Below are positions 14,350 to 63,227 of a stretch of 64,000 nt of DNA, one piece after another. The stretch's first letter is position 1, and each line of letters begins with the position of its first letter. This DNA comes from Macrostomum lignano (Eukaryota), in NCBI GenBank assembly GCA_002269645.1, contig NIVC01001286.1:1-64000 (forward strand), written 5' to 3'. The notes beneath the pieces were generated by a model, which saw nothing but the letters and a program-made list of their open reading frames with translations, did not search any database and was not told where the DNA came from. The position numbers were made by a program, and so were the translations under genes.

Positions 14350-17300
14350 TCACTCTACGCAAGCTTCCTCTAACCGGAGCCGCTTCTCGTCTTGAACGGC
14401 ATCGCCGTCACCAGTCGAAGCCAGCTGCTTCAATTGCCGCTTGCTGTCCGCTCGTTCGCGCATCTCCTCGAAGCTGGCCTGCAGCTGACGCTTGAGCAGC
14501 GGTCGGTGCTGCCTACAGCGCAGCTCGGGCAGCAGCCCGGTACTCAGATGAGACCAATTCAACGTTGGCGGAGTCAACGGCAGATGATCGACAGCTAGAC
14601 GAGCAAGGCAGGATCGGACAGTCAGCTCAGTCCAGTGACGCTGCAAGGTGACCCTGAGATGCTCGCGGGCGTCCGCTGAGCAACGCCAATCGAGATGATC
14701 GAATTCGGCTTTAGATAAGATTAATGGGAGACCATCGGCCAACACATATTCTGGCTTCCTGTGAAGGTTGGTGTAAAAAAAATTGAGTCACAAGTGCATC
14801 ACGTGAGTTGTAGAATCGTAAGAAGTGGTCCAAGAGTCGTTGTTTAAGTTAGCCTAGTAGTTAGAGTGTCGGACTCACGACTTCAAGGTCGGGGGTTCGA
14901 TTCCTGATCCTGCACTCGGAACAATTTGTGTCCTTGAGCAAGACACTTACTCGTAACTCTGCATTGCTTTAGCTCGCCCAGCTGTAAAATGGGTGCCAGC
15001 ATTAGCTGGGGTAATTGAGGGTGCGTGTGGTGACCCCCCCCCCAGTCCTTGGACTGAACAGCCGTACGCAGCCTTCAGATGCGCCGCGCAATTGCGGCTG
15101 AGCTGTCGGTTGCACATCTGCCTATTAGGCATTCGTTGATTTTTATTCATAAAGTGACGGATTCTACAGCGACTCTTTCACGTCTCATATACCGTCTACC
15201 TGTAAGAGTCACGTCTTTCCTATTCTATCTGTGTGATCTGCAACGACTTTTGAACGCCTCTTGGCGTTCGTAACGTTTTCATTAAAAGACGTCGACCAGT
15301 ATAAAACTCACCTAGGAGTAGCATTCACATCCAGCAGTTTATCAACAATACTTGGCTCTTCAAGCCCTTGACCAACCAGAGCCAGCACAGAGAACATATT
15401 CCTAATCTGATGATAAAGAAAGGCCGTAGCTCGAACTCGGAACGCGAACATCTGATTATGATCTGATGCTTGACTGCAGTAATCAACAGGTTCAATATCG
15501 CACTCCATTACAGTTCGACAATAATTAGCCTGATCTGGGGAGAATTTTGAAAAATTCCTGAAATCGTGCTCCCCAACAAAGCGTTTACAGGCGTCTCGCA
15601 TAGCTTCTATATTGAACGTTGACCGAGGAAAATGGTACAGGTATTCCCGGCCTTTACAGGCGAATCTGGCACTGAAATCTGGCGTCACAGGTGCCCAAGC
15701 CAGCACTCGCAGCTCGCGCGGCAGCACTCTATTAAGCGGACCAACAGGATCCAGTTCGTTAGCCTCCGTGTCCTCACTAGACGGAGGCGTTCGCCTCTTG
15801 CCAATGTCCGGTCCAGTGTCCGGTATGCAACCGGTGTTGCAGTCGGACAGTAGGCTGCGAATATTTAACGATACAACATTAGCCAGGGCTGAGACGCCTT
15901 TGTCAGTTCGAGCGCAAGACACTAGATTGCAAGTGTCTATCGATTCGATTAATTGTACGCGTTTTAAACCGTCGCACAAGCGGCCGAGTACCGTGTTGTC
16001 TGTGTTGTCCTGGTCAGGGGGGTAGTGATTAGTCATTTATTTGTGTGTCTACGACTCTACGTAAACATTTTCAACCTTGATCGTCTAAATATACTCTTAA
16101 CTGTGTTTATAAATTGTTTGTGCCCTCCTTGGACACCCGGTGTCTGATTGTGCCCTCCAGCGACACCTACTGTTGTGCCCTCCAGCGACACTTAGTGTCT
16201 GATTGTGCCCTCCTTGGACACCAAGTGTCTGATTGTGCCCTCCTTGGACACCCAGTGTCTGATTGTGCCCTCCAGCGACACCTAGTGTTGTGCCCTCCAG
16301 CGACACTTAGTGTCTGATTGTGCCCTCCTTGGACACCCAGTGTCTGATTGTGCCCTCCTTGGACACCCAGTGTCTGATTGTGCCCTCCAGCGACACCTAG
16401 TGTTGTGCCCTCCAGCGACACTTAGTGTCTGATTGTGCCCTCCTTGGACACCTAGTGTCTGATTGTGCCCTCCTTGGACACCCAGTGTCTGATTGTGCCC
16501 TCCTTAGACACCTAGTGTCTGATTGTGCCCTCCTTAGACACCTAGTGTCTGATTGTGCCCTCCTTGAACACCCAGTGTCTGATTGTGCCCTCCTTGGACA
16601 CCTAGTGTCTGATTGTGCCCTCCTTAGACACCTAGTGTCTGATTGTGCCCTCCTTAGACACCTAGTGTCTGATTGTGCCCTCCTTGAACACCCAGTGTCT
16701 GATTGTGCCCTCCTTGGACACTTGGTGTCTGATTGTGCCCTCCTTAGACACCTAGTGTCTGATTGTTCCCTCCAGCGACACCCAGTGTCTGATTGTGCCC
16801 TCCTTGGACACCTAGTGTCTAATTGTGCCCAGTGTCTGATTGTTCCCTCCAGCGACACCCAGTGTCTGATTGTTCCCTCCAGCGACACCCAGTGTCTGAT
16901 TGTTCCCTCCAGCGACACCCAGTGTCTGATTGTTCCCTCCAGCGACACCCAGTGTCTGATTGTGCCCTCCTTGGACACCTAGTGTCTAATTGTGCCCAGT
17001 GTCTGATTGTTCCCTCCAGCGACACCCAGTGTCTGATTGTTCCCTCCAGCGACACCCAGTGTCTGATTGTTCCCTCCAGCGACACCCAGTGTCTGATTGT
17101 TCCCTCCAGCGACACCCAGTGTCTGATTGTTCCCTCCAGCGACACTCAGTGTCTGATTGTTCCCTCCAGCGACACCCAGTGTCTGATTTTTCCCTCCAGC
17201 GACACCCAGTGTCTGATTGTGCCCTCCTTGGACACCTAGTGTCTGATTGTTCCCTCCAGCGACACCCAGTGTCTGATTGTGCCCTCCTTGGACACCCAGT

Positions 17301-25438: not shown

Positions 25439-28350
<2,912 letters not shown>

Positions 28351-31212: not shown

Positions 31213-33338
31213 ATGCAGGAATCTCGATCCACCAGCGAGTGTCCGACTCCATGCTCTGTAAGTATTTACTCCGGTACTTCTGATTTTACCATAATAAAAT
31301 TTGACTTTTGATTATTTGCTCTTCTTCCCTGTTACAACTTCAGATCCAGCTAAGTCCAGTTTTATCCAACCTAAGTCACACTGTGAGCGACGCATTGTCC
31401 CGAAGTTCAGCCCACGGTATTAGCAGGATACCAAAGTCCAAAGACCTTCCTACGAAATTGATGTGGTCTATTTTGTTTCTAGTATTCTTGGGATTCTTCT
31501 GCAGTACGACGGTGAACTTAGTGCAAAAGCTTACCCACGTGAAGATAGTGAAGACGTACAAGTTAGACAATGCTCCATTTGTTTTTCCTGACTTGTACTT
31601 TTGCCCAAATCATCCTTATTCAGGCAGTTTCCCGTTTGTGCTGAACGAAAGCCAAGCTGATCTTATTAATGCGGAAGTCGAGAGGCTAAATGATCTGTAC
31701 AGTCAGTTGTACTGCAGTAGCAATATCTGTGAGGAACCGTACAACATCACGAGATTCCGAGCGGCTGTAATTCAACACTCCCTGCCAGTTCACTTGATGC
31801 ATCAGTTTCTTTTACATCGCCTCTCTCAATCGGTGCTCCATAGGCCGTTCGTGTACTCGGAAGTCAGACGAAACACAAGCAAAATTGAGCTGCGAGAGGC
31901 CAGCGTGCCTAACAACATGTTCCTGATGTGCATCCAGCTGATCGTGGCCGAGCAGGAGAGAGAAAATTTCGCAGCCAGAAATAGCCGAATGCTGATCGAG
32001 CTGTTCACTGATCCATTCTTTCCGGAGCTGGGCTACTCAGGGAAGCCAATAAAGCCGATTGTGAATCCGGAAACCGGTGAAAGCATTCCATTTCTCTACT
32101 GGCATCCAGAGTATGGCCAACAGTTGCTGAAGAACTCCGGCTTCACTCTGCTCATAGCTCCTAAAGGCGTGTACCCGTCTATTGCGCACGAAACCCGATT
32201 GAAACTAGCCCCGGGCAAGTCTTACCAGATCTCCATCCGTATGGAAGAGAATCGCTATAGCGACGAGCTTCACGGTGGCCACTGTATGCCTCACAACGAA
32301 AACGCCGTTTTCAAGGATCACCTTACGGACGATCCGACAGAGTTCAAATACAGCTATGCAGCTTGCTGGTACGAAGCTCTCAGCAACGCCTGGCAAAATC
32401 GAACTAATCACATATATTCCGACTATCCGGTGCCCTGGGCGCTAAGACACGCGCCACGCTGGGAGAATCTTACCGAGTCACTCTACAACAGATCTGTTGC
32501 CAGCTACCTGGACGTGTGGGACTACATCAACTCACAAGAAGCAATGATCGCTAAAACCTGTCTCCGAAAGAGTCCATGCGTGTTTCAGAGCTACTATGCC
32601 AGATACTCGTTCGACAACTGGCCCTCATCAGGCAGTTCGCTGGTCGAATATTTTTCTGAATACGATGCCCTAAATGATGAGAACTCCGCACCTGCTATGG
32701 CTCAGCTGAGAAGGATTGCTCGCGAATTGAAGCTAGGTGAGATACTTTAATTGATACTATGAAAAGGGTATTTTTTCTACAAAGTTACAGAAATTGATTT
32801 GTGAGTTACTCGTTCAAACAGCGCGTTTCAATTAGGAAAAACGGCGCATGCGTTGTTTGGTTTTCAGTGACATTGTCCCTCGTCCTTTAAACGGTAGTAA
32901 CACAGAAAGGCAAATATTGGAAAACGGCCTTCCTTTTAGAGTGGTGACTCATACAGTTTATACACTAACACTCCTCTACACGTTAACACTCAATAAACAG
33001 GCAATCATTCTGCTCACACCGAGGCCATGTTCCGCAGCTTCATCGCCGAGTCCATGCTCGAGGTTCGCATAGAGGCCAAAAGCGCCCTATCGCCGCAGCT
33101 GATAATATCGCACTCCTATTCGATGACCGCATTTCTAGCCGACATTGGCGGACTTCTGGGTCTCTACATAGGGTGTAGCCTGCTCACCGTCTGCGAACTG
33201 TTTGAGCTGTTGTATCAGCTGGCTTTGAGTGTAGCTCCCAGTGCTCGAAGACTTCGACAAGGACGAAGAGGCGATGATGTGAACGCCGAGCCAGTTGTTG
33301 GAGACGGTGAAGAGATGGACGAACTCACCAGTGCTTAG
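31213..33338 (+). CDS. DEG/ENaC (degenerin/ASIC-like) sodium channel subunit; exons 31213-31257, 31344-32736, 33001-33338 (591 aa)
   Basis: SSAHG motif before TM1 (LMWSILFLVFLGFF), FPDLYFC, and the TM2 signature FLADIGGLLGLYIGCSLLTVCELFE; GT-AG junctions in frame; TATAAAA at 31123. Confidence 0.88.
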
Positions 33339-35108
33339 AAGTTCTCTGCGTTTTTAGCAGACTAATTATGGTTTATATTTCTTGCCACTTGACCATTCTG
33401 ATCATCTTCTGTTCTGTTTTCCAGCAATATTGATCGAGTCAATGTGTTTGACCAGCAACTAAGAAAATTACTTTAAGCACAAATTTACACTCTTATAACA
33501 GGATTATTGTGAAATGGATCTTTCAACCTCTTGTTGAGAGCTCTCCTAGATGATGCTGGCAACATAAGTGTGTCTCACTCTTGATCATCAATTATAAACC
33601 AAGCTTCAAAAGAACAAAGCTACCTGCCTGTTTCAGGAATAACTAAAATTTAGTCAAGGACAACTTGATAACTCAGGACCGGAAACGAGCCAATTCATGG
33701 CGAAAAAAGTATGAGGCTCGTTTAAAAGCATTGTTCTATGGCCCATCCGTATGCGCATGCTTTCAGTTGCCAATGTATACTCGTATCATATTTGACTTTT
33801 TGATAGGCAGTCAGAAGGCGGGTGCAGGGTCGGTTTTCTTAAATGTTGAATAGTTTTATTACATAAAGTAAACGTCGTGAAAATACACAATGGGAAAGCT
33901 GTACACGCAGCACATGTATAAGGAAACTCGAGAAAAATTTACGATTCTTTATTCATCTGAACTACAAATAGAGAGGAAAATAACAGTCACAGAACGGGAC
34001 AAGAGCTGACCATGATAAATAGTGAAGTGTTTGCTCCAGGTTCGCTCACTGTCCACTCAGCTTCAGTATTTTTCTATCGTGCACTTTATCCGGTGAAGGA
34101 GCGCTTTTTGCTCCTCGTTGAACATAACCCTTGAAGAAACAGTTGGTGAGGCGCACGCAGCATCCCAGAACATCTGCTTCAGGGAAGTAAAACTCGCCAA
34201 CGGCAGCAAACAATTTGCGCACTCGCAAAGCACATGACGGTGATCGCAGCGAAATGAAGCATCCGAAACAAAGGCAAGCAAAATTGAACAGCCACTTTGG
34301 CGGGTGCTTCAACTTTCCCCGGGAAATCATTTCAGTGAATTCACCGAGTGGGGTGTTTAAATTTTCGGCAGGACCATCACCGGCAATTTTCTCCTTAAAC
34401 GTTATGTAGCCTGAAATGTTATTATTATGCCTCAGTTGTCCTTCGCCTCAGCAATCGTTATTTCCATCCAAGTTCAAGTAACACAAATGCATGCCTTACC
34501 TGCAATATAATAAACAGATGCCTTTTCTGTTGCAGCTGCCTCCCTCATTCACTCCCACAGCGCTGCAGCTTCCCACCCAGCCTCATCGGCCGCTTTTGAG
34601 CAGGGCGCTCACGGGGTTCGAGCTCGGGACCGCGTCAGGCCTGGACCTACTTCAGCGTCCGAGGGGCGACCGCATGAAGACACTCGGTGAGTCCGCGCTT
34701 ATATATGAGGAGGTGGTTGGTGACGCAGAAATGTATAGTGACGCTGAAGGGTGAGTGTTGTGACATTGTGGTGTTCTAGTTTTATGCTAGGGTATTCTAG
34801 TGCTATTAAATGTCAGTTGTTTGTTTGCTATGAGTCGCGAGTTCGCTGGTTGATTGATTTTATTTTGTGTGCGTGTTTCAGTTTCAGAGCGTGTGCACTG
34901 CGCCCGGCAGTCAGGCCGAAACCATCTTCTTGAGTCCTAGGGTTAATAAACGAGTCGAATAAAGAGCCCAGGTTGTATCTGCTGGCTCTCCACGTTTTTT
35001 AATAGTATCTACGCATTCAACTACAAGCCTTTAGCTTCTTCAACTTATTACAAGTTGTCTTCACAGAATTCACAAAATTTACCGAACTCCTTCAACTCGT
35101 GTTTTCAG

Positions 35109-36112
35109 CGCCAAGAAGCAGCTGGACCCCAGCTTCACCGACTGGGACTTCATCCTGCAGGACGACAAGAAACAGCTCATCGGCCGTGGTGGATTCGGCG
35201 AGGTGTACAAGGCCCTCACAGACCGCAACCAGACTGTCGCTGTCAAGGTGCTGCCCCTGAGCGGCACCGACAAATCGGGGAAGCTGCAGAAAGCCGTCGA
35301 GATGGAGAAGCGGGGAATTGAGATCCTCAAGCGGCTCTCGCATCCCAACATTCTGCAGTTCCTCAAGTGCGAGCAGAAGTCGGATGGGCTGTACATCTTC
35401 ACCGAGCTGATCTCAGGTCACAGCCTCTTTGAGCTGATGCAGCGTCAGAACAAGCCGTTCAAGGAATCCGAGGTCAGGGACTTCTCCAGACAGGTGCGTC
35501 TCGGGGTTCTCTGGCATTGCCTTTGGAATGACATTCGTGTGTTATCAGTGTGGGGTCAGTGTGAGTGGGATAAAGAATGAATATATGCACTCTCATGACT
35601 GCTTAAAACTGCTCCACTTGCAGATCTGCTTAGGCCTGAACTTTCTGCATTGCCAGCCGCAGGGCGCCATCTTGCACCGTGACATCAAGAGCGAAAATGT
35701 GATGCTCACCAACGAGGGCGGCGTCATCAAGCTGATCGACTTCGGTCTGGCCAGGGAGATCTTCAACACCTGCAGCCTGAACGCAGGCAACCAGCCAAAA
35801 GGCACCTGGCACTTCATGGCGCCCGAGATGCTCATGGGCGAGGGCAATTCGATTCCGTACTCAGCAAAAACCGACGTGTGGGCCTTCGGCTGCACCGTGT
35901 ATGAGCTGACGGCCATGCAGCCTCCTGATGGCAACGAGCCGCAGCAGCGCATCGTCATCCTGAGATACGGAGAGCGGGCGATGCCTCGGATTGCGGACGG
36001 GTTCTCAGCCGGCCTGAAGGACTTCTACCTCAGGTGCGTAGACTATGACCCGAGGAAGCGAGCGGACACCGCGGAGCTGCTGCGGCACAGCTTCCTGAGA
36101 GCCTCATCGTGA
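35109..36112 (+). CDS. STE11/MAP3K-like Ser/Thr kinase domain; exons 35109-35493 and 35624-36112; first exon(s) probably within 34490-34750
   Basis: IGRGGFGEVY, VAVK, HPNILQF, HRDIKSEN, DFG, GTWHFMAPE, DVWAFGCTVYEL, DPRKRADTAELLRHSF. Candidate phase-2 donors at 34687 and 34751, so the start is ambiguous. Confidence 0.85.
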
Positions 36113-40133: not shown

Positions 40134-41353
40134 ATGGTTGATAAAGTTGTGTCTTTACAATTACTTTTCCTATTTGGTAAGTGACTGCCACTCTGACTGA
40201 AAATCTGCTGCCTACAGTTATTCAATGCATGCTGTTCATTGCTGACCACCCATTGCACCAACGCAGTTTGCTGCTCGCTCGTGCTTCGAGTACAAGGCAC
40301 CACCAGTTTGCGGATCTATTCTGTGTGCTCAGAGCAGCAGCTTCAGATGCTGGAAGCCGTTCTGAACGCCTACAACAACGTCACGACAACAACCGAGGCC
40401 ACTGATGCAAGCGACTGTCTAATAAAGTGCCAGAGGGTGAGCTGCAGCGCTGCCGTCTCAGTGGAGAGCAATGCCACGTGCGAGATGATCACCATAACAA
40501 CCGCCAAGCTGTCAATCTCAGCAGATCAGGTGCAGCAACTCATCGGATCTCAGGTCGGTGCAAAGGTGTGGAAGGCGGACGACAGCGACTGGTCTTCGCT
40601 TGCAGTGCAGCTTCGGAGTGAGTCATCAATGCATAGTCGTGGGTGGTTGACATGATTTTTACAGACAGAAATTGCTCTCACTCCAGTTTTGTAACTCGCT
40701 GACGCTGTTCCATGGCAGACAGCAGCACAGGCAGAAACGGCTCAATCCAAAGCGTCCTCATCAACACGACCGGCTGCTACATGATCAAAGCTGCCGGCGC
40801 CAGAGGTGGCGACAACTTAATGACGAACACATCCGGAGGCCAGGGAGCTCAGGTGAGCGCCAGAGTCAACCTGACAGCCGGCACCCAGCTGGGCCAGATG
40901 GGCGGCTCGACCTACTTGGAGTTTGAGGGAGGCGGCGGAGGTGGCGGCAGCTTCGTGTACCGGACAGGCGACCAGCTGCTGCTGCTGGCTGCCGGCGGAG
41001 GTGGCGGAGCTTCCTGGAGTAGAAATGGTGAGCTCAGTAGCTGCCGTTGCTTACATTGTAAAAGTTTAGAATAAAAAAACAATCAGATCAGCAGTTTGAT
41101 TGATTTCACCGTAGGACAACCGGGAGAGATCGGGATCAACGGTTCCAACAGTCTGGGTGGCTATATGTCCTTGGCGGGATTCGGCGGCACGAACGGTCAG
41201 CCGGGCTCCAACAACCCCGCTAATACCCACCCTGATGGAACCCACGGCGGCTGCGGCGCCGGCTGGCTCGGCAGGGCCGTCAACCCCAGACGGAACTCCT
41301 CGGACGGAGAGAGAGGCGGCAGTCTGGCCGACATTGGGTTTACAGCTGAGTGA
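40134..41353 (+). pseudogene. PAN + glycine-rich paralog B, frameshifted and 3'-truncated; exon-like blocks 40134-40176, 40218-40617, 40719-41027, 41115 to about 41332
   Basis: Same exon boundaries and motifs (DCLIKCQRVSC; GCYMIKAAGARGG; HGGCGAGWLGRAVNPRRNSSDGERGG). The signal-peptide exon is out of frame with the PAN module, IVVG is missing, and homology stops at 41332. Confidence 0.75.
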
Positions 41354-42871: not shown

Positions 42872-45800
42872 ATGGAGTTTCTACCGATCGAAATCCTGAT
42901 GATCTTCGTGTGCTGCAACCTGGTGATAGCACAAGGTATTTATTGGCTAATTCATGTCTAGATGGCTTGTATCAGAAATACAGACAAATATTTTTAGGTC
43001 TTGAATTTGGTTCACTTTTTAGCTGACATGTGCGACCAGACCAAGTACCGGAAAATTCACGGACCGTTTCTCCTCAGCCCTCTAGTGAGCAGCGAAGTGA
43101 TCAACATCACAGGTGTGCAAAATGTGAACAACTGCATGATGCTGTGCCGGATGAAAGGCTGTTCAGTTATCGTTGCCATGACGACGACCTCGACTGTTTG
43201 TCGACTTTTAATATTGAAGGGACTTTCTCTGTCAAACACGATACTGGATTCTCCATCAGCTGTGGGATCAGAGGCTGGATCGCAGGTGTTGGTCAACGCC
43301 GACATCAATGCGACTTTGGCTGCTATGATCAAAAATTCATCCGTCAAGTTGCTGAGTGAGTTTTCCGTTTTCGTAGGGCAGTGAATTCAATGTCTATATG
43401 AATTGGCTCTTTAGTTTACGGTTTTTAATTTCAACGATCAAACTTGTAGTAAAGGTAGTTTTAATGCCTTAAGTTGATATGAAATCCCCTTTTTATCACT
43501 GTTATCCTCTTTGACTCTAGCTACGGGAGCTAGATGTTATGTCTCGGCGTTTCTAGTCATGTAGGCTGACAATTCATCGTTTGCAGTTGGTGTGGTGAGG
43601 AGCCCAACTCCGGAGGCTGTATTCAGCAGGTGGTTATGTTGGCTTCCAGCCATTCTCAGCATTGCTTTGAGCTGATTTCTTATCGTCTCAGTTGATAACA
43701 CATGTTCTCTTGCTTCCATCTCGTCTTTCCAGACAGCAGCACTGGACGAATCGGGAGCGTCCAGTTGGTGAACATCACCCTCACCGGCTGCTACCGCATC
43801 GAGGTCGCCGGAGCCAGAGGCGGGGACAACCTCTACAAGTCCACAATCAGTGGCAAGGGGTCCTGGGTTGCTGGCAGCTTCAACCTGACAGCGGGCACTC
43901 AGCTGACCATCGTGGTCGGACAGGCTGGTGGCATGGTGTCAGAGTCATCTGCTACAAAAGACTGCGGCGGAGGTGGCGGCGGAGGTAGCTTTGTGTACAA
44001 GACGGCAGACGGTCAGCTGCTGATTGCTGCTGGTGGAGGCGGCGGAGCCGGAAGGGGCTTTAATGGCAAGTGAAATTTAGTCTTTTCAATAACTCTTTTG
44101 CGTGAGAAATACAAATAAGACCCGAGTTCCTCTTTAAACTGTTTGTGTCGATAATCGTATCCTAAACTCATAACTCATGGAGACGAACAGCTCAGTGGCG
44201 CGAATATGACAAAAGTAATTTCAAATGTGGCTATTCTTTCTATGGCTTGGATATGAGCTTTAGAGTTATAAAAATAGTTGTCTATGGTCGTACCTTAAAT
44301 ACCAAAACCAAAAGTGATAAAAGTAAGCGAAATGTGGCAACGATCGAATAGCTATCTATCTGACTCAAAGACCGTACTGCCGTACACAAGAATCTTAGCG
44401 ACTGACCGACGAAGGCTCGAAAAACAGCTACAGAATTTTGCGACTGAATATAGTGGTGCCACATTACTTAATGTGACAAATCGCTTTTGTCACAATTTGT
44501 AACAAATTACTTTTGTCACATTCGGGCTTGAAAAGGTATATTTCCTAAACTGGGGGTCTCAATAACCATAGACTAAAGCGTATAGCAATGTCGGGGCTTA
44601 GCCCCCGCACCCCCACTATCCGCTCTTTCATTCTTTCTCTCGTAGTCTTGCTGAAGCAAAAATTTCTAAGGAACAAAAACAGTAATACCCATGCTTTGTG
44701 GGCGTAAATGGCAAATCATCGGGCTACCTAGAATACCATACTCGGCCCCGACCTGAGAAATGCATCCTCGGACTTTCTTTTCCATAGCCATATTTGGAAA
44801 GGAAGAGAAAATATTTAACCTACAGAAAGTGCATTCTCAGCTCTTTTCCAGTATCATCTTTTTCCAGGGGGAACAACTTCTATGGTAATTTATCGGTTGT
44901 AGGTGGACTGAAAACCATCTCTCAGTCCCCGAACGAGGCCTGAGATGTAGTTTGCTACAGTTCTATTTAACAAATTCAAACCAACAAAACTAACGGCAAC
45001 AGGAAGTTAAACATAGTAAGAAATAGAAGCGTCTTCCAAGCAATGGCTTAAAAACGGTTTTAACGTTTTTGGTGTTACCATTGATGTTAAGCCTCGTTTT
45101 ATTTGCAGGATTAGCACTCACTACGGTGCTTTTGTTCCTTAGCTTCAACAGAGCGTTCAGGCTCGGTTTCAATAGACGGACTTGATGACTGACCACCAGA
45201 TTGAAGAGCGTGCGATACTTTAACATGGTCTTATACGTCAAACTGAATATAGCGCTCAATAGCTGTCGAAGAGTGTCCTGTAACACGAGTAATGTCCTCT
45301 CTAGTGAAGCCAGCACGGTGTAGAGTACTTGCGCAAGTCTTGCATAGAGACTGATTAGTGTACCTTTCAGTCATTGCAGTTAGGGGAGCCGTTAATTCAC
45401 GAACAATACCGTCAAGCTGTGCCAGCCGACGGGTGCGGTGAGTTTTGGTACCACCTGCCTTGCTGGATGCATGAACATCTTTAATAGATAGTTCCAATCG
45501 CAAGCGTTTCATTCATGATCCTCCTTCACCACGAGAAGGCTAGTTGTATCACCATGTGGAATTTTATTGTGTCGCTGCTCGAACCACTGGTAAAACATTT
45601 TACAGCCCATTGTTCTTTCCTTCGAGTATTTGGTGGGATGGCAGCATCCAGCTTCTCTTGTATATCGTCAGTCGTATGCGTAGCAGGATTCGTTGCAGTG
45701 TATTCTTTACTTTCAAAATATCTTAGCACTAGATCTAACTCGTCTTCCATGGCAAAATGTTACTATCATGTACTCGTATGTAATCCACTTTGGCTGTGCG

Positions 45801-50507: not shown

Positions 50508-52500
50508 ATGAACTACAGAATCAAAGCAGTCGTCAAGGTAGCCTTGATTCTGTTGTGTACACAGCTTAGTTGTTCGGAAGGTAAGCCAAAACAAACCCTT
50601 TGTTCTCGAGTAAACAACCAGTGCCTAAAAATATTATTGTTATTCATGGAAAGTGTTTATCAAACTTAAAATAATATGAATTTGTAATTTCTGCAAACAT
50701 TTGTCACTAAATATCTGCATTCATTCATAATTGCCCATGAAGTACAAGATAGCGTTGATGACAAAGTGACAAAAATTCTCAAGCATGAAACTCGATAAAT
50801 GCACGAAATTGCAGAACCATTTGCAAACTACGAGCATTTAAATTCAACCATCTTAAAACTTTAGGACTCTGTTCCGGAGCCAAGTATCAAAAGATCGAGG
50901 GCCCATTTCACCTCACTCGTGCCGTTAGCACAGAAGTGACCAACATCACGGGTCTGCCATCAGTGCTTGACTGTGTGATTCATTGCCAGCTGCAGGGCTG
51001 CATCTTAGCCGTTATCATGACTACAAAATCTGTTTGCCAGCTTATAAAAGTGACCGGTGTTTCTGTAAAACATTTAAACTTTGAAACTTCATCGGCTGTG
51101 GGATCGGAAGTTGAATCGCAGGTGTTTGTAAGCTCCGAAGTCAATGCGACTTTGGCTGCGGTGATCAGCAATGCCACCACCATCAAGTTGCGAAGTGAGC
51201 AATGCTTTTACTGAATTTTAATCATTTTAATCCTTCTAAAGTTCTGTATGATTTATGTATTTCAGACAGCAGCTCTGGAAGAGTCGGTAGCATTCAACAG
51301 GTGAATATCACCCTGACCGGCTGCTACCGCATCGAGGTCGCCGGAGCCAGAGGCGGTGATCACATTGCCTCATCCAAACTCGGTGGCAACGGGTCCTGGG
51401 TTGCCGGCAGCTTCAACCTGACAGCCGGCACTCAGCTCAGCATTGTTGTTGGACAGGCTGGCGGCTCGATCGAGCTTGACGGCGAAGGCAAACGACGTTG
51501 CAGCTGCGGCGGCGGAGGAGGCAGCTTCGTTTACCGCACTGTTGACAGTCAGCTGCTTATTGCAGCTGGTGGAGGTGGCGGTGCGAACAGGAAAATCGAT
51601 GGTAATAAGGCATATCCTTGTATCAATATTTCCGTTATAAAATAACTTAACTGTAGTAGGAATACTGTCGGTTTGCATGTTCCTGCTGAAACTTTGCCTT
51701 CGCTTACACGGAGACTTTCTGATGCTTAAAGCTTCATTTCGGCGTCTTCACATTAACACAAGAGTGTACATATGCCTGACGATTAGAACGTTAAGGACCA
51801 CTGTACACCCTGTGCGAGAGTGTGCATTAGTGCGTCTCTGCGTACAGTATTGGCAGTTCAGTAATCAGCAGAATGGGCAAAATTGCCTCAGCGCTGGTTG
51901 TGGGACGATGTCGCTGAAGAAATTGCTTCTGCTTATCCATAGTCCTGCAAGTTTTTTTTACATATCAGGCTACTTTTTCTAATTGTAAATCCAACAGGCC
52001 TTTCGGGTCAAGTGGAAGTCAATGGAAGCGACTCGAATTCGGAAAAGGGGACCTTCATTGGTCTGGGAGGTGTTAACGGCCAGCCCGGCTACAATGAGCC
52101 TTGGAGAACTACTTATGGAGCAACCCACGGCGGCTGCGGCGCCGGCTGGCTGGGCAGCGCCGTCAACCCGAGGCGAAACTCCAGCGACGGCGAGCGAGGC
52201 GGCGGCCTGGCAAACGGCTGGGCCGGCGGCAGAGCTGGAGACGGCTGCACCGGTGATGGCGGATTCGGCGGCGGCGGTGGAGGCGGCGGCATCGAGATGG
52301 ACGGATCGAAGAACGGAGCCAGCGGCGGAGGCGGTGGCTTCAGCGGAGGCGGTGCCGGCGTGAAAGCGGACAACGCCGGAGGCGGCGGCGGTTCGTTCTG
52401 CAGCGGCAGCGGCTGCACCGCCATTGCAGGACAAAAGGCAGCAAGCGAGCACGGTTTTGTTGAGTTGCGACTGCTGGGTTTATTTGAACTCTGTTTTTGA
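50508..52500 (+). CDS. Secreted PAN + glycine-rich paralog D; exons 50508-50580, 50865-51194, 51266-51601, 51998-52500 (413 aa)
   Basis: Signal-like MNYRIKAVVKVALILLCTQLSCSE; DCVIHCQLQGC...VCQL; same glycine-rich motifs; GT-AG phase-1 introns; 1242 nt in frame. Confidence 0.85.
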
Positions 52501-53859: not shown

Positions 53860-54699
53860 CACCCCAACTGCCAGCCAGAAAACTGCCAGCCGACAACTGC
53901 CAGTCGACAACTGCCAGCCAGAAAACTGCCAGCCGACAACTGCCAGCCGGAAAACTGCCAGCCGACAATTGCCAGCCGACAACTTCCAGCCGACAACTGC
54001 CAGTCGACAACTGCCAGCCGAAAAATGCCAGCCGACAATTGCCAGCCGAGAAAACTGCCAGCCGGAAAACTGTCAGCCGACAACTGCCAGTCGACAATTG
54101 CCAGTCGACAACTGCCAGCCGAGAAAACTGCCAGCCGGAAAACTGCCAGCCGACAACTGCCAGCCGACAACTGCCAGCCGACAAGTTCTAGCTAATTGAA
54201 TCTACTGTAGCCTACTTATTAGCTAAGTAAAAAGCACGAAACTGTTTGGCTAGCAAAAGGCTTGTGGGGTAGCCTTAAATGTCGCCCTTCCCTTCCCTAA
54301 TATTTTCAGATTTCCATTAGAACTTTAGAAGTATATATGCGAAGGAGAAGGCATTCAAATTTCGTATTTTAGGTAGCCTTTGCTCTTTCTTTGAAAGAGC
54401 TGGCAGTCGGCTGGCAGTTGTCGGCTGGCAATTGTCGGCTGGCAATTGTCGGCTGGCAATTGTCGGCTGGCAATTGTCGGCTGGCAGTTTTCCGGCTGGG
54501 AGTTGTCGGCTGGCAGTTTTCCGGCTGGCAGTTTTCTCGGCTGGCAATTGTCGGCTGGCATTTTTCGGCTGGCAGTTGTCGACTGGCAGTTTTCCGGCTG
54601 GCAGTTGTCGGCTGGCAGTTTTCCGGCTGGCAGTTGTCGACTGGCAGTTTTCCGGCTGGCAGTTGTCGGCTGGCAGTTTTCCGGCTGGCAGTTGGGGTG
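53860..54699. mobile_element. Foldback element (about 840 bp): inverted arrays of 14-15-bp CTGCCAGCCGACAA / CTGCCAGCCGGAAAA units around an AT-rich spacer
   Basis: Left CACCCCAACTGCCAGCC... (to about 54185); right ...GGCTGGCAGTTGGGGTG (from about 54400). Confidence 0.8.
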
Positions 54700-55787
54700 G
54701 ACCCGCTGTAGAGGACCCCACAAGTAAACACGGAATTGACCCGCGATGCACCTGATTGCTCCGTTGCTGGCACATGCAGACCTAGCCGTTAGTAAAAAAC
54801 AATTGAAGCAGAAGCAAAACACAAACTTGTATTTGTTTTTTTGCAAGTAGGAAAAAGCACTGCTACTTGTAGCTATAGTTAAAATTTCATAATAATATTC
54901 TAAAATATTAATAGGCCTTTTAAAATTTTAAAATCAAACCAAACCAAACTTTTGTGTATTTTTCGATTGATCAACTTACGCTCGTAAGTTGATCAAAAAG
55001 TGGCCATTGCTTGAAAAAAGAGGCAGCTAAAGCTCTTATTGCTATCACATGAATAACATTCAGTTGGCGACCTTATTGGAGGCAAAAGTCTTAAAGTTCT
55101 ATTCTAATAAATACTAAAAAATAAAAAGAAAAAATAATAAATCACAGCCATGGACACTGCATGGTTCAAAAAGTGGCCTTGTTTTTGCCCTCATTTTTAC
55201 TTAACAGAGAACTACTAACTTTACTGAAATTTTACCTATATCTCAACTCAACAAGCGTAATTTAGAAAGCGAATAGCTTGCAATTTTATTCTGAATTCAA
55301 TAGCGTGCAAATCATGTCATACAATATAATTAATTTGTTTTATCTCTTAGGTTCAGATTCGTAGTAGAAGATGAAAGCTTGCGCATCAATTTAAAAAAAA
55401 TTTGTGATAAAACTATCCCACATGCACATTCACAGAAGTTTTACTGCAATTACAAAAGGGTAATAAAAGTAAAAAAATTACAGAAATGGTATGAACTTTT
55501 CATCGAAAAACATTACAGTAACAACACGAAACATTACACATTTTATAAGAATAAAATTGCGGCTTGACTTTTAATTTACTTATCAGAGATTAATTTCTTA
55601 AATCACCTTTCTTAAAAGAATAATAGAAAATAAAATTGAAAGTTGTTGAGGCGGAAATTTTATAGCGAATTAGAAGAACCCAGAAATTCAACGTCTTGGT
55701 GAAACCAACCAAGGTTAGGAAGGTGAAGTGCAACATGGAGCATAAAATTTTCATTCAAGTGTACTCAAAGTTTAGCGCAGAGTTTCA

Positions 55788-57293
55788 TTATTCTTCAGCT
55801 CCAGGCTGAAGATTGCCCTGACCTACCAAAGCCGAAAATTTGATGCCGCGAATTTGCATATCCGGTTCGAATTCGAAACGGTCTTCTAACCACTTAGTGA
55901 ACTTTTTATCAGCATTGGAGCAATACTCCGACACTTCATCGACGAGCTGTTGCTGTAGCGACTTGATGTCGTGAATGAGCTCCTTAGGCTGCACAAAGCT
56001 GTACTCGTGACGAACGTTTTTTAATTGATCGTTCGGTACTCCAGCCTGCACGTTGATTTGACCGGAAAACTCGCGCAGACTGGTAATCAATTGTTCCTGA
56101 TGTTCCGCGTCCAACTCTACGCTCAATGAGTAGACAACGCGTTTTCTCACATATCTCCTGTGTCGACTTGGAACTTCTGTGACAGCAAGCGTCCCTGTGT
56201 CAGTTCTCTGTCCCGACTTGTCTACTAAGATGATTGGCAGGTCACTAGTTGTTAAACTCTCTAAACAGTTGGTTAGAGTACTTTTCACAGCAGAAAAGGG
56301 ATTGCGTCTATCCGCTGACCAGGAGAGCAGGTTCTCCAATTGCTGCCAAAAGCTATTTGGCAGCTCCTTGAACACAGATTTGCTTTTGTTGATTTCCACT
56401 ACTGGCCCGCTTACGCACTTGCGAATCAGCATAGCACCATTGGCTTCGTTGGCTAAGATATTTGGTATGTCCTCATCGCATGCGGTGAAGGCGCTGCCCG
56501 GATAGTCTTGGAACGGCAATTCGCGGAAAACCGCCTCGCACATGAGAACGCCGAATGAAAATCGGTCGCACGCTTTGTTGTACCGTGCTCTGAGGCCGTC
56601 AGTGGGCTTTCGCAGCTCCGGTGCTCTCCAGCGATCGGTTCCGACCTTGGGCGTCATGCCTTCGGGGTCGACTTCACGGCAAGTGTCGAAATCGCAAAGC
56701 TTGCATTTAGTCTTCTTATCAAACATTAACACGTTTGCTCCTTTCACATCACGATGGATTAAACCGCTCTCGTGAAGGTACTGCATGGCATCGGCCACCT
56801 GAATCAGCCAATGGAACAAGTGCTGCTTCGTGTAGTAAATATTATTTGTAGGGTCTCTAGCCAAGCCATCACTCATCACTGGTACGATGTGAGTTGAATC
56901 CTGCAGTTTGTTGCACATTACAAAGCTGAGGCTGCACTCCCCGATCTCCATCAAGTAGGACGGAACGCTCGACGGGTCGTTGGGATCGACAGTCAGGCAG
57001 GCTTCGTACACAATCACGATGTTATTGTGTGACAAATCTCTCAGGCGATTAAATTCTCTTTTGCAGATTTCGATGGGACTTATCTGTGGCGCGCCTCTAG
57101 TAATCTCCTTCATAGCTACAGTAGTTCTTTCAGTCAGCTCTGGTAAAAGAAATCCGTTAGCCCAGTTTCTTTTCAGCTTGACTGAATGAATTCTAACGTA
57201 GTTGCTGCTCTGCTGAGAGATGGCGATTTCTTTTTTGGTCTCCAAATCCAGACAGTGGTACAGACTGTCTATTGGCGAGTCTACTCTTGGCAT
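55788..57293 (-). CDS. Intronless atypical TKL-like protein kinase 1 (501 aa from the ATG at 57293) with an unknown C-terminal domain
   Basis: VAMK, REF (alphaC Glu), HNNIV, HRDVKGAN, CKLCDFD, GTDRWRAPE, CDRFSFGVLMCE; no GxGxxG; no TM or signal peptide. Confidence 0.88.
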   Translation of the reverse strand: MPRVDSPIDSLYHCLDLETKKEIAISQQSSNYVRIHSVKLKRNWANGFLLPELTERTTVAMKEITRGAPQISPIEICKREFNRLRDLSHNNIVIVYEACLTVDPNDPSSVPSYLMEIGECSLSFVMCNKLQDSTHIVPVMSDGLARDPTNNIYYTKQHLFHWLIQVADAMQYLHESGLIHRDVKGANVLMFDKKTKCKLCDFDTCREVDPEGMTPKVGTDRWRAPELRKPTDGLRARYNKACDRFSFGVLMCEAVFRELPFQDYPGSAFTACDEDIPNILANEANGAMLIRKCVSGPVVEINKSKSVFKELPNSFWQQLENLLSWSADRRNPFSAVKSTLTNCLESLTTSDLPIILVDKSGQRTDTGTLAVTEVPSRHRRYVRKRVVYSLSVELDAEHQEQLITSLREFSGQINVQAGVPNDQLKNVRHEYSFVQPKELIHDIKSLQQQLVDEVSEYCSNADKKFTKWLEDRFEFEPDMQIRGIKFSALVGQGNLQPGAEE

Positions 57294-57918
57294 TTTTCGA
57301 ACCAAATCTGTTATTAGCTATTCAGAAAAAAACAATTCAGTATAGCTAAGAGCTAAAAAAGACAAGCAAGGTCTTTTATGTTAACTGCTTTGCAAGGGAA
57401 GTTCCACTTATTTTTTGTAACTTTTCATCCACTGTACTCTGCTGAGCAGAAAATGAGTCGCTATCTGAGGTGTGTGCGCGCGGTGTTTTAACAAACGCTA
57501 TTAGATTTAGTCTAGGCTGACTAACTGTGGAAAGAGCGAGTGTACACATGTGCGCACAATACCGTCTGTAGGGGCAGACAGGTTTCCACTGGGGTTGTTA
57601 ACAGAAACTAAAGAGACTTAAGCCCCAAACCCCAGATTTTGCGTACAATATGGTGTTTCAGCAAGCCGGCCGCAATGACACTGTCAAAGTGGCTTGCTCT
57701 CTTTTGCGAGTGAAAATTCTGCCCCCCCCCTCCTCCCCATTTACCACGGCTCAGTTTACTGTACAGAATATCGCATAAAAGCTAAAGCGGTGTGACCTTG
57801 ATGACAAGTGCTACATGCAGTTGTCCGCAAGAGCAATAATAGTGAACACACAAAATAGTGAAGCAAGATAATAGCATTTTAAACTATTCCAACAGTGCAA
57901 ACAAGCGAACTGAGTAGA

Positions 57919-59469
57919 ATGGCAGGTTCTAATAAAGGTCTGAATCGGTGCGTCTCGATTGAAAACAGCGAGACAGGACGCTCGCTGATGGCCCGATCCA
58001 ATCATCGAATCTACAAAAAGGAGCTGCAGGAGGACTTCTCATTGGAGGGCGACACGATCGCATTGCTTTCTAAAGGCGATTTCGTTGCTATGAAGCAGTA
58101 CTGCGGAAGTAGTAGCAAAAAGGACATGAAAGAACTATGCCAGAAAGAATATGAGCTGTTGTCAAAGTGCAATCACAAGAATATTGTCACCGTGCTGGAT
58201 TGCACCATGGAAGTTGATGAGAATAATCCAGAGAGTTGGCCCGTCATTTTTATGGAGCTCGGCGAGTGCAGCCTCCAGTTTGCTCTCACAGCCAAGAGGA
58301 AGAGCAAAAGTGAGTTCACCTACCCGACTGGAGATGGTGGCTATACCTGGGATCACTGTATTAATTGGCTTCGCCAGGTAGCCGAAGCCATGGCGTACCT
58401 GCATAATAATGGTATAGTGCACCGCGATCTTAAGAGTTCCAACGTGCTCCTATTCGAAGGAAAAAGGCTATGCAAGGTGTGCGACTTTGACATGAGCCGC
58501 TACTACGATCCCGATGGTATGTCGGTCGACATCGGCACATGGCGTTGGATGGCGCCAGAAGTGCGCAACTGGCGTAACGGCGACAAGAAGCTGCGCTACG
58601 ATTTTAAAGCTGATTGTTATTCGTTTGGCATACTAATTTGCGAATCCATCTATCGACAGAGGCCTTTCGACAGCTACGAAGAGCGTCTCTTTCAACGGTT
58701 GGAAATTCCAAGCACTCCGGACTTGGAATTAGACCTACCAGAGGCTTTCGGAGCCATGACGCTGTCGAGGCCAACTAGCAACGAAGACTGGAAGGTGGTC
58801 CTCGATCGCAGTAAGTCAGTATTCCCGTTGACAGATAATCTATGGAGGCTGGTTGAGAATCTGCTCAGTTGGAGCCCAGACCAGAGGCACGATGCTAACC
58901 TGATCGAGTCTAAACTTGCCATCGAGAGTCCGAGACCAGATCTGCAAGGCAGCAGCGAGTCAACACCTGATGGTGCAGATCTGCCGCAGCTCATCGACAC
59001 CGAGGCTGAGGCCGATGCTGAAGAACCGACTCCAACAGACACCGGCTTGCCTGGTAACAGAGTTTGCCCGCAGATACCAAGCGTGCGAAGAGTCGTCAAG
59101 CTGCTCTATTCGGTATCAACTGACGGCAGCAGCGAGCTCACCGACGAGGAGAAGTGCCGCATCGAGGAGGTGCTCAAACTACACGCGGACAATGTCTCCA
59201 GTTTTGTGTTGGAAGAGGAAGAACCTCGACAAGTATCGGACTCGGATACCGGAATAGAAGAGAGCCTAGCAAACTTGCGCACCAACTTCCGGTTCACTGA
59301 AGTCGGCCAACTGGAACTCGAGATCAGTGGCGCGAACCCGCAAACGTGCAGAACACTGGCTGGCTGCTGTCGGAAGGAGTCATTCATGAACTGGATGGCT
59401 GTATTATTCAAGCGCGAGATGCGACACAAGAGACTAAACAAAATACGCTTTTGCTTAGCTGCTGTTTAG
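57919..59469 (+). CDS. Intronless atypical TKL-like protein kinase 2 (516 aa from the ATG at 57919) with a related C-terminal domain
   Basis: VAMK, KEY, HKNIV, HRDLKSSN, CKVCDFD, GTWRWMAPE, ADCYSFGILICE; no GxGxxG; no TM or signal peptide. Confidence 0.88.
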   Translation: MAGSNKGLNRCVSIENSETGRSLMARSNHRIYKKELQEDFSLEGDTIALLSKGDFVAMKQYCGSSSKKDMKELCQKEYELLSKCNHKNIVTVLDCTMEVDENNPESWPVIFMELGECSLQFALTAKRKSKSEFTYPTGDGGYTWDHCINWLRQVAEAMAYLHNNGIVHRDLKSSNVLLFEGKRLCKVCDFDMSRYYDPDGMSVDIGTWRWMAPEVRNWRNGDKKLRYDFKADCYSFGILICESIYRQRPFDSYEERLFQRLEIPSTPDLELDLPEAFGAMTLSRPTSNEDWKVVLDRSKSVFPLTDNLWRLVENLLSWSPDQRHDANLIESKLAIESPRPDLQGSSESTPDGADLPQLIDTEAEADAEEPTPTDTGLPGNRVCPQIPSVRRVVKLLYSVSTDGSSELTDEEKCRIEEVLKLHADNVSSFVLEEEEPRQVSDSDTGIEESLANLRTNFRFTEVGQLELEISGANPQTCRTLAGCCRKESFMNWMAVLFKREMRHKRLNKIRFCLAAV

Positions 59470-60278
59470 CGAAATCAACAGTCTATGATAACAAAACCTA
59501 AAGGCGGGAAGTAACAGAACCGGCGGTATCTTTGAACAAGATGCCCATTCCATCCAATTAGACATTGATTCTCGCGGCTGGTGTACATGAAACATTGGTA
59601 TGAACAAGCCTTAAGATACTAATTTGTTATTAAACAATAATCTGTAATAAAAATGCATTTTTTGATTTACTTTTATGCAAAAATCTTGGTCAGCATCAAC
59701 GGAGTCTCAATATCTAGCAAAAGTACAATTTGTGTGTCTAAAATAATTAGTGAATAGAAATGCACTATTAAAATTATAGAAGTATGACATAAGGAACGTA
59801 ATATTACATTTTTTCTAACTACTCGGTGTGTATAATCCTTCAATGCAGTTTTTCTTTGTATACACGTTTATTGCCTGATCAAAGCTTTAATTTCAATAAA
59901 CATGCGCTCGTCGACAGCTTTACAGTTTTGAGCTAAAAAATCACGATATCAGGAGATACACTAATCTATTGATCTATCGTTGTGATTGACAATCTCCCAA
60001 AGTCTAGAAAACAAAAAAGAAGTAAGATGTAACTAAAAAAACATGAATAGTAACTAAAAAGAACTCCTGTCAAGTATTATAGAGTTAGTAACGCTGAACT
60101 TCTCAAACACAAAAAAATACTATTCAATTTCTTATTGAAAATCATTCAAATGAAGCAATGTATGATACTGGTAAAACTGACAACTTAGGATGCATTTGGA
60201 TGCAAGTGATTGTCGAAAGATTAAATCAAAGCTTTCACCAGCCCAATGCAGTAAGCATTCAGTAGCCGCACTTCAGCC

Positions 60279-63227
<2,949 letters not shown>

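What the first reader, a model, noticed from the sequence alone, without database searches (positions are those of the whole stretch)
55788..59469. Head-to-head pair of intronless DFD kinases lacking the glycine loop and sharing an unknown C-terminal domain
Seen: two divergently oriented single-exon kinases with ATGs about 625 bp apart. Both keep VAMK, the alphaC Glu, HRDxKxxN and APE, but both have DFD rather than DFG, no GxGxxG, and an insert before beta3. Both end in a related domain of about 110-130 aa (V.R.V..YS.S...E...L...F...F..W...F..E...I.F). Established: DFD is rare in kinases (MNK1/2 are the known example, where it is linked to autoinhibition). Inference: an old inverted duplicate kept as a co-regulated pair from a bidirectional promoter, possibly a heterodimer or sensor/executor couple reminiscent of paired immune receptors.
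Basis: partly seen in the sequence, partly recalled or inferred. Interest (0 to 1): 0.7.

Follow-up and report, generated by a model that had tools for sequence, protein, structure and literature searches.

The report
Paired atypical TAK1-like flatworm kinases
Two neighbouring, oppositely oriented, intron-free genes of the flatworm Macrostomum lignano encode an old duplicate pair of TAK1-like protein kinases with an odd ATP pocket and a tail domain found nowhere else; they are real and a little unusual, but nothing shows they act as a sensor/executor pair.

Summary
The window is Macrostomum lignano contig NIVC01001286.1. Kinase A (55788-57293, minus strand, 501 aa) and kinase B (57919-59469, plus strand, 516 aa) are single uninterrupted ORFs with start codons 625 bp apart. 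Both match Pfam Pkinase. Both keep VAMK, the alphaC Glu, HRDxKxxN and APE. Both have DFD instead of DFG, no glycine in the P-loop, and about 14 extra residues before beta3. They are each other's closest relatives (36% identity, E 4e-67). The closest solved structure is TAK1, then ZAK, so they are TKL-type Ser/Thr kinases.

The tails are only marginally alike in sequence (p 0.005-0.08). Both are predicted to form the same ferredoxin-like beta-alpha-beta-beta-alpha-beta domain. The tail has no Pfam match and no homolog among 1.84 billion representative proteins.

The whole head-to-head pair occurs three times in the assembly, in recently duplicated blocks. All ORFs are intact (dN/dS about 0.15 for A and 0.47 for B). 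GenBank already lists them as hypothetical kinase-domain proteins.

"Old inverted duplicate" is supported. A shared promoter, heterodimerisation and an immune-receptor-like pairing are untested. I file this as a lineage-restricted variant of a known kind, of modest interest.

The parts
55788..57293 (-). Kinase A coding sequence: 501 aa plus the stop codon, one uninterrupted ORF. Identical to a GenBank protein of M. lignano; sister copies are named BOX15_Mlig021319g1 and g2.
56259..57236 (-). Kinase A protein kinase domain (aa 20-345).
   Evidence: Pfam Pkinase E 5.8e-30; best solved-structure match TAK1, E 3.6e-18; translation checked
57189..57221 (-). Kinase A stretch ISQQSSNYVRI, in the position of the glycine-rich loop and containing no glycine.
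56685..56693 (-). Kinase A DFD motif, in place of DFG.
56223..56243 (-). Kinase A linker motif DLPIILV, shared with B (DLPQLID), inside an otherwise low-confidence linker.
55815..56156 (-). Kinase A C-terminal domain (aa 380-493). Predicted order of elements: beta, alpha, short alpha, beta, beta, alpha, alpha, beta, i.e. ferredoxin-like. An orphan by sequence.
   Evidence: AlphaFold2 core pLDDT 79-88; Foldseek best E 2.4e-3, generic ferredoxin-like folds; no credible Pfam hit, best E 0.4; no homolog in 1.84 billion representatives
57294..57918 (.). The 625-bp region between the two start codons, 42% G+C. By position it is a candidate shared or bidirectional promoter, but this is not shown.
   Evidence: It is 98-98.7% identical between the three copies, which is no more conserved than the coding sequence.
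57919..59469 (+). Kinase B coding sequence: 516 aa plus the stop codon, one uninterrupted ORF. Sister copies are named BOX15_Mlig005192g1 and BOX15_Mlig019192g1.
57976..58938 (+). Kinase B protein kinase domain (aa 20-340).
   Evidence: Pfam Pkinase E 1.4e-37; AlphaFold2 pLDDT 85-97 in the core; Foldseek matches to kinase structures at E 1e-15
57985..58011 (+). Kinase B stretch LMARSNHRI, in the position of the glycine-rich loop, with the glycines replaced by M, R and H. The model still shows a beta1-turn-beta2 hairpin here.
58483..58491 (+). Kinase B DFD motif, in place of DFG.
59086..59466 (+). Kinase B C-terminal domain (aa 390-516), with the same predicted order of strands and helices as in A.
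   Evidence: AlphaFold2 pLDDT about 73-83; no Pfam hit; no homolog
59646..59651 (+). AATAAA 177 nt after the stop codon of B: a possible poly(A) signal. This is a motif match only.
55285..55290 (-). AATAAA on the minus strand about 500 nt after the stop codon of A: a possible poly(A) signal. This is a motif match only.

Best explanation
These are two paralogous Ser/Thr protein kinase genes of Macrostomum lignano, found in no other organism in the databases. I infer that they are cytosolic.

Shown:
- They derive from a TAK1/MLK-like (TKL-type) kinase.
- They arose by an old local inverted duplication. The pair was copied again when the M. lignano genome recently duplicated, giving three near-identical head-to-head pairs.
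- Each protein is a kinase domain, then a disordered linker with a shared DLPxxL motif, then a C-terminal alpha/beta domain of about 115-125 aa that is predicted to be ferredoxin-like and has no detectable relatives.

Inferred:
- Both keep every residue needed for phosphotransfer: the beta3 Lys, the alphaC Glu, the HRD Asp, the catalytic-loop Asn and the first Asp of DFD. They also keep a Thr/Ser that aligns with the activating 'HMT' threonine of the TAK1 activation loop. So they are most likely real enzymes that are switched on by activation-loop phosphorylation.
- DFD together with a glycine-free P-loop and the pre-beta3 insert most likely gives a remodelled nucleotide pocket with low basal activity. 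This is by analogy with MNK1/2, where DFD favours an autoinhibited DFG-out-like state.
- The C-terminal domain would serve as a regulatory, docking or oligomerisation module.
For: Kinase identity and motifs.

Paralogy: 36% identity over 349 aa, E 4e-67, against E 1e-22 or weaker for all other proteins.

TAK1 affinity: the family profile scores 92.8 bits against TAK1, 74.8 against ZAK and about 73 against OSR1/SPAK. The alignment to TAK1 covers YYT..H..W..Q...YLH, K.CDF.T and the activation loop.

Real genes under constraint: three intact copies. Across the three copies, omega is about 0.15 for A (9 nonsynonymous against 16 synonymous changes, binomial P 4.7e-6) and about 0.47 for B (P 0.048). 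The GenBank annotation is built from transcript assemblies (PMC5730564).

Domain layout: AlphaFold2 models. Foldseek places the tail among generic ferredoxin-like folds: eIF2-alpha C-terminal domain, dimeric ferredoxin-like/ABM proteins, PII-like SbtB and designed ferredoxin folds, with best E 2.4e-3.

Effect of DFD in MNK: PMC3326643.
Against: - No biochemical or expression data were available.
- A P-loop with no glycine at all is typical of proteins that bind nucleotide poorly, so one or both could be pseudokinases.
- Constraint on B is weak. Omega is 0.47, and 11 of the 17 amino-acid changes fall in the L001 copy.
- The fold of the tail rests on a six-sequence alignment with moderate confidence. 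The Foldseek matches are not significant (no E below 1e-3).
- The TAK1 affinity comes from score ranking against solved structures, not from a phylogeny, and only the C-lobe aligns.
- Homology of the two tails is marginal by sequence.
Confidence: 0.6

Rival explanations
1. One or both are pseudokinases. Without a glycine-rich loop, and with DFD, they would not turn over ATP. They would act as scaffolds or allosteric partners, possibly of each other or of a canonical MAP3K.
For: All P-loop glycines are replaced. DFD favours an inactive conformation in MNK. The N-lobe is too divergent to align with any solved kinase. Constraint on B is relaxed.
Against: The three residues whose loss usually marks a pseudokinase are all kept in both paralogs after long divergence: the beta3 Lys, the HRD Asp and the DFG Asp. 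So are the catalytic Asn, the alphaC Glu and APE. MNK1/2 are active kinases despite having DFD.
Confidence: 0.2
2. One reading: a co-regulated couple transcribed from a bidirectional promoter. The two would work as an obligate heterodimer or as a sensor/executor pair, as head-to-head paired immune receptors do.
For: The head-to-head layout with a 625-bp gap is kept in all three copies. The partners have been kept together since an old duplication. Some ferredoxin-like domains dimerise; the Foldseek list includes dimeric ferredoxin-like proteins.
Against: The three copies are recent duplicates of a single locus, so the pairing has been observed only once in evolutionary terms. No homologs exist elsewhere with which to test the pairing. 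The two proteins have the same architecture and no integrated extra domain. I have no expression or interaction data. An inverted tandem duplication gives this layout by itself.
Confidence: 0.1
3. They are young-looking lineage-specific genes drifting towards loss. On this view they are transcribed ORFs without an important function, and the odd motifs reflect decay rather than adaptation.
For: They are found only in M. lignano in the databases. Omega is 0.47 for B, and one copy has collected most of the changes.
Against: A is clearly under purifying selection (omega 0.15, P 4.7e-6). The six ORFs are all intact and of identical length within each type. A and B still share every catalytic motif at 36% identity, which requires long-term constraint on both lineages.
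Confidence: 0.1

Closest known systems
TAK1 / MAP3K7 (TKL group, MLK-related)
   Same: It is the best-scoring solved structure for the family profile (92.8 bits, E 1.7e-25). The shared C-lobe signatures are YYT..H..W..Q...YLH, K.CDF.T and G(T/S)..W.APE. A Thr/Ser aligns with the TAK1 'HMT' activation-loop threonine.
   Different: TAK1 has a canonical GxGxxG and DFG. Its N-lobe does not align with A or B. The A/B tail matched no Pfam family and no other protein. As I recall TAK1, its C-terminal part binds TAB2/3, which is a different arrangement. A and B also have a pre-beta3 insert.
ZAK / MAP3K20 and other MLK, RAF and TNNI3K kinases (TKL)
   Same: These are the next-best matches (ZAK 74.8 bits, then B-Raf and TNNI3K at 64-66 bits). 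They share the Ser/Thr-type HRDxKxxN and the D.(Y/F)SFG motif of TKL kinases.
   Different: The scores are lower. A and B have no leucine zipper, SAM, RBD or ankyrin domains.
MNK1/2 (MKNK1/2, CAMK group)
   Same: DFD in place of DFG, plus kinase-domain inserts. In MNK, DFD stabilises an autoinhibited DFG/D-out state (PMC3326643).
   Different: MNKs keep the glycine-rich loop and belong to the CAMK group. They are not among the best 60 solved-structure matches of A, B or the family profile. The DFD here is therefore convergent.
Kinases with an attached small alpha/beta regulatory domain (for example plant STY kinases with an ACT domain)
   Same: The concept is a TKL-type kinase joined to a beta-alpha-beta-beta-alpha-beta module of about 100 aa. 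Several distant database hits to B are such ACT-kinases (PF01842).
   Different: In those kinases the ACT domain is N-terminal and Pfam recognises it. Here the domain is C-terminal and has no ACT or other Pfam match even at E 10. The Foldseek matches are generic.
Head-to-head paired immune receptor genes (plant NLR pairs such as RGA4/RGA5 and RRS1/RPS4)
   Same: Divergent orientation with a short shared intergenic region.
   Different: This comparison rests on my own knowledge. Those pairs are NLRs, not kinases. One member carries an integrated decoy domain, and the pairing recurs across species. None of these features is seen or testable here.

Membership tests
Eukaryotic protein kinase superfamily (Pfam PF00069) | Profile match above the curated cut-off | tested here: met
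   105 and 130 bits against a cut-off of 31.7
Eukaryotic protein kinase superfamily (Pfam PF00069) | Catalytic residues: beta3 Lys, alphaC Glu, HRD Asp, catalytic Asn, DFG Asp, APE | tested here: met
   All are present in A and B
Eukaryotic protein kinase superfamily (Pfam PF00069) | Glycine-rich loop GxGxxG | tested here: not met
   LMARSNHRI in B and ISQQSSNYVRI in A. The central Gly is present in 44 of 45 relatives.
Eukaryotic protein kinase superfamily (Pfam PF00069) | Catalytic activity | not testable with these tools
   Needs ATP-binding and phosphorylation assays
TKL group, TAK1/MLK-like | Closest sequence affinity to TKL kinases | tested here: met
   Profile against PDB: TAK1 92.8 bits, ZAK 74.8, and RAF, TNNI3K, MLK1 and CTR1 in the list. 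STE20-type OSR1/SPAK are interleaved at about 73 bits.
TKL group, TAK1/MLK-like | Monophyly with TAK1 in a kinome phylogeny | not tested
   No kinome reference set was at hand. Only score ranking was done.
TAK1 orthologs | Canonical N-lobe and a TAK1-type C-terminal partner-binding region | tested here: not met
   The N-lobe does not align with TAK1. The tail is an unrelated orphan alpha/beta domain.
MNK (MKNK) family | DFD motif | tested here: met
MNK (MKNK) family | CAMK-group kinase domain closest to MNK | tested here: not met
   MNK is absent from the best 60 solved-structure matches
ACT or other named ferredoxin-like domain families | Profile match to a curated family | tested here: not met
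   Pfam at E up to 10 gives one chance-level GAT hit (E 0.4) for A and nothing for B
ACT or other named ferredoxin-like domain families | beta-alpha-beta-beta-alpha-beta fold | tested here: inconclusive
   The predicted topology fits. Foldseek's best E-values are 2e-3 (PDB) and 1.9e-3 (BFVD), spread over many unrelated ferredoxin-like proteins.
Paired head-to-head functional gene couples | Pairing conserved in independent lineages | not testable with these tools
   The only other copies are recent duplicates within the same genome. No homologs were found elsewhere.
Paired head-to-head functional gene couples | Co-expression and physical interaction | not testable with these tools
   The gene identifiers are not found in the text or held supplements of M. 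lignano papers. No multimer prediction was available.

The most novel reading that the evidence does not exclude
A and B form a flatworm-specific heterodimeric kinase module. On this reading they are co-transcribed from the 625-bp shared promoter, and their orphan ferredoxin-like tails mediate pairing or bind a small ligand. Partner binding would relieve the autoinhibited pocket created by DFD and the glycine-free P-loop. That would be a new way to gate a MAP3K-like kinase.
Probability: 0.08. Interest if true: 0.55.

Novelty: new variant of a known kind. Interest (0 to 1): 0.3.

Why it matters
If both proteins are active, they would be natural examples of a protein kinase that works with no glycine at all in its phosphate-binding loop, combined with the rare DFD variant. 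That would be useful for understanding how much of the canonical ATP site is dispensable, and how DFD-type autoinhibition can evolve outside MNK. The tail adds one more orphan domain to the many lineage-specific genes of a regeneration model organism in which RNAi and transgenesis are available. Otherwise the genes are ordinary: already annotated, species-restricted duplicates of a very large family.

Tried and rejected
- Close homologs outside M. lignano. Two word-indexed searches with the full proteins found none. Those searches did not even retrieve the partner paralog, so they exclude only close relatives. A third search with the generic HRD-to-APE core removed, to favour family-specific words, again found only the two M. 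lignano clusters.
- Tail homologs. A full HMMER profile search of 1.84 billion representatives returned only the two proteins themselves.
- Named family for the tail. Pfam at E up to 10 gave nothing credible.
- Viral or horizontally transferred origin, considered because the genes lack introns and their best distant hits are protist, plant and giant-virus kinases. Rejected for lack of support: identities are only 29-37% over the kinase core, the tail has no viral structural match, G+C is 48-51% against 45% for the window, and the flanking genes are ordinary host genes with introns.
- A link to ALK/LTK receptors. This is suggested by UniRef names in the same 90% cluster. It traces to an old 2380-aa chimeric gene model that fuses upstream glycine-rich-domain genes with kinase B, so it is an annotation artefact.
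- MNK membership. Rejected.
- Expression class. The gene identifiers are absent from the full text of the library and from the held supplements of four M. lignano papers.
- Intergenic region. Only short chance-level repeats. No Rfam family or tRNA between 52 and 64 kb.
- Foldseek with the full-length model. It returns generic kinases only.
Full report
**Source and gene models.** Exact protein look-ups place the window on Macrostomum lignano assembly Mlig_3_7 (GCA_002269645.1), contig NIVC01001286.1, positions 1-64000. M. lignano is a free-living flatworm. The finding covers two long ORFs: 55788..57305 on the minus strand and 57895..59469 on the plus strand. The first ATGs are at 57293 and 57919. 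This gives proteins of 501 aa (A) and 516 aa (B), with 625 bp between the start codons. The GenBank models at this place are single-exon CDSs of exactly these lengths. That annotation was built from genome-guided transcript assemblies. The same paper gives an average of about 4.9 introns per gene (PMC5730564), so an intron-free CDS is unusual for this genome. UTR introns cannot be excluded. The N-termini of A and B align from residue 1, which argues against hidden upstream coding exons.

**Checking the observation.** Both proteins match Pfam Pkinase well above the curated cut-off. I translated the exact coordinates to confirm the following motifs:
- VAMK
- the alphaC Glu
- HRDVKGAN in A and HRDLKSSN in B
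- DFD in both
- APE
- the alphaF Asp
- the conserved alphaH-alphaI Arg

I aligned A and B with the 45 closest database kinases (alignment A1). In that alignment:
- 44 of the 45 relatives have DFG and one has DFD.
- The central glycine of GxGxxG is present in 44 of 45. The equivalent stretch is LMARSNHRI in B and ISQQSSNYVRI in A, with no glycine.
- The distance from the beta2 Val position to the beta3 Lys is 28 residues in B and 31 in A. It is 13-15 in most relatives and 21 in one dinoflagellate-type group. The 'insert before beta3' is therefore real.

The AlphaFold2 model of B still shows a beta1-turn-beta2 hairpin at this place and a confident kinase core.

**The C-terminal domains.** This is the weakest part of the observation.
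- *Sequence similarity is marginal.* BLASTP does not align the tails. Smith-Waterman scores against shuffles give p 0.005-0.009. Global alignment gives p 0.007-0.05, depending on the scoring scheme. hhalign gives P 0.079.
- *The predicted topology agrees.* The order of elements is beta, long alpha, short alpha, beta, beta, alpha, alpha, beta. It spans B aa 392-514 at pLDDT about 73-83 and A aa 380-492 at pLDDT 79-88. Both predictions used alignments that contain both proteins, so they are not independent.
- *My reading.* The tails follow clearly homologous kinase domains in tandem paralogs, so homology by descent is the simplest explanation.
- *No named family fits.* Foldseek places the A tail among generic ferredoxin-like folds: eIF2-alpha C-terminal domain, dimeric ferredoxin-like/ABM proteins, PII-like SbtB and designed ferredoxin folds. 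No match has E below 1e-3 in the PDB or in BFVD. Pfam finds nothing credible.
- *No other protein has it.* A full HMMER profile search of 1.84 billion representative proteins returns only the two proteins themselves.

A short DLPxxL motif is shared in the otherwise disordered linker.

**What kind of kinase.**
- Single-sequence searches of solved structures give TAK1, ZAK, OSR1/SPAK and B-Raf.
- A profile of the six family sequences separates TAK1 (92.8 bits, E 1.7e-25) from ZAK (74.8 bits), OSR1/SPAK (about 73) and B-Raf/TNNI3K (64-66).
- Only the C-lobe aligns. The alignment covers the alphaE region (YYT..H..W..Q...YLH), K.CDF.T, and the activation loop.
- In that alignment the Thr of A (GMT) and the Ser of B (GMS) sit opposite the 'HMT' threonine of TAK1. 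From my own knowledge this is Thr187, an activating autophosphorylation site.
- HRDxKxxN is of the Ser/Thr type.

I therefore file them as TKL-type, TAK1/MLK-like kinases. They are not TAK1 orthologs, because the N-lobe and the tail differ. They are not MNKs either. MNKs share only DFD, keep the glycine loop, belong to the CAMK group, and do not appear among the best structural-sequence matches.

**Origin and distribution.**
- A and B are 36% identical over 349 aa (E 4e-67). That is far closer than either is to anything else (next best E 1e-22, kinase core only). They are local paralogs from an old inverted duplication.
- The whole block occurs three times in the assembly: the window, NIVC01000031.1 (L001) and NIVC01001102.1 (L002). 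Each copy holds A, a gap of 625-628 bp, B, and then two aminotransferase genes.
- The copies differ by 1-5% at synonymous sites, and the intergenic region is 98-98.7% identical. This fits the known redundancy of this assembly: 180 Mb in blocks at least 95% identical, attributed to the extra large chromosomes of the DV1 line.
- The three pairs are one evolutionary observation, not three.
- All six ORFs are intact. Across the three copies A has 16 synonymous and 9 nonsynonymous changes (omega about 0.15, P 4.7e-6). B has 10 and 17 (omega about 0.47, P 0.048), and 11 of those 17 lie in the L001 copy.
- No other family member was found. Searches did not retrieve the partner paralog, so they exclude only close relatives. 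For that reason I ran a third search with the generic HRD-to-APE core removed. It again returned only the two M. lignano clusters.
- Other Macrostomum genomes and transcriptomes do not seem to be in the searchable collections. 'Species-restricted' therefore means 'as far as these databases reach'.

**Likely mechanism.** The steps that are shown:
- two expressed-gene models;
- kinase fold and a full catalytic residue set;
- TAK1-like C-lobe;
- a glycine-free P-loop and DFD;
- a disordered linker;
- a compact alpha/beta tail;
- purifying selection, strong on A.

The steps that are inferred:
- The proteins are catalytically competent. By the usual Lys/Asp/Asp criterion they would be called active.
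- They have a remodelled nucleotide pocket with low basal activity. In MNK1/2 the DFD motif flips into a DFG/D-out state that blocks ATP, and changing it to DFG relieves this (PMC3326643). Loss of the P-loop glycines should further alter how the phosphates are held.
- Activation would come through phosphorylation of the conserved activation-loop Thr/Ser.
- The tail would be a regulatory, docking or oligomerisation module.

The main rival is that one or both are pseudokinase scaffolds. Both members have the same architecture and catalytic residues, no extra integrated domain is present, and an inverted tandem duplication produces a head-to-head layout without any selection for pairing.

**Verdict.** Co-regulation, heterodimerisation and the immune-receptor analogy are untested. 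The genes are already in GenBank as hypothetical kinase-domain proteins, and I found no paper that mentions them. They are a lineage-restricted variant of a very well-known kind. The combination of a glycine-free P-loop, DFD and an orphan ferredoxin-like tail is mildly interesting to kinase biochemists, but there is no sign of a new system. Interest 0.3.

Noticed in passing
window ~25626-26857, ~40323-40972, ~43028-44031 and ~50867-51561 (all + strand): Four paralogous two-exon stretches encode proteins with an ALK/LTK-like glycine-rich domain. UniRef fragments of them are named 'receptor protein-tyrosine kinase'. The copy at about 50.9-51.6 kb is not among the called genes of that contig stretch. 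An old 2380-aa chimeric model (UniRef100_A0A1I8HTI7) fuses such genes with kinase B.
   Followed up: partly
window 53865-54184 and 54406-54694: Two arrays of a 14-nt satellite (CAACTGCCAGCCGA, about 20-22 copies each) in inverted orientation, about 220 bp apart. They lie about 1.1 kb downstream of the stop codon of kinase A and form a large imperfect palindrome.
   Followed up: no
window 60572-61814 and 62332-62994: A 1.2-kb (AGAC)n microsatellite lies next to an exon of the downstream aminotransferase gene, and a 16-nt tandem array has 41 copies. The long ORFs and the weak PPI_Ypi1 Pfam hit in these stretches are repeat artefacts.
   Followed up: partly
window ~35100-36112 (+): A separate, conventional, intron-containing protein kinase with a normal DFG (IDFGLAREI) and HRDIKSEN. 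It is only about 28-30% identical to A and B and does not belong to their family.
   Followed up: partly
window 31308-32750 (+) and 15308-16036 (-): The first is an ORF with an amiloride-sensitive sodium channel (ASC/ENaC) domain, E 1.3e-20. The second is an ORF with a tRNA pseudouridine synthase domain, E 5.3e-22.
   Followed up: no
L001 10001-11551 (copy of kinase B on NIVC01000031.1): This copy carries 11 of the 17 amino-acid changes seen among the three B copies, including changes in the kinase domain. This may be relaxed constraint on one duplicate.
   Followed up: partly
alignment A1, proteins P0006, P0014, P0015 and relatives (dinoflagellate-type kinases): These distant TKL-like kinases also carry an insert between beta2 and beta3 (W.R.F....TSSIIVAVK). 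It is about half as long as the insert in A and B. It is probably convergent, but I did not examine it.
   Followed up: no
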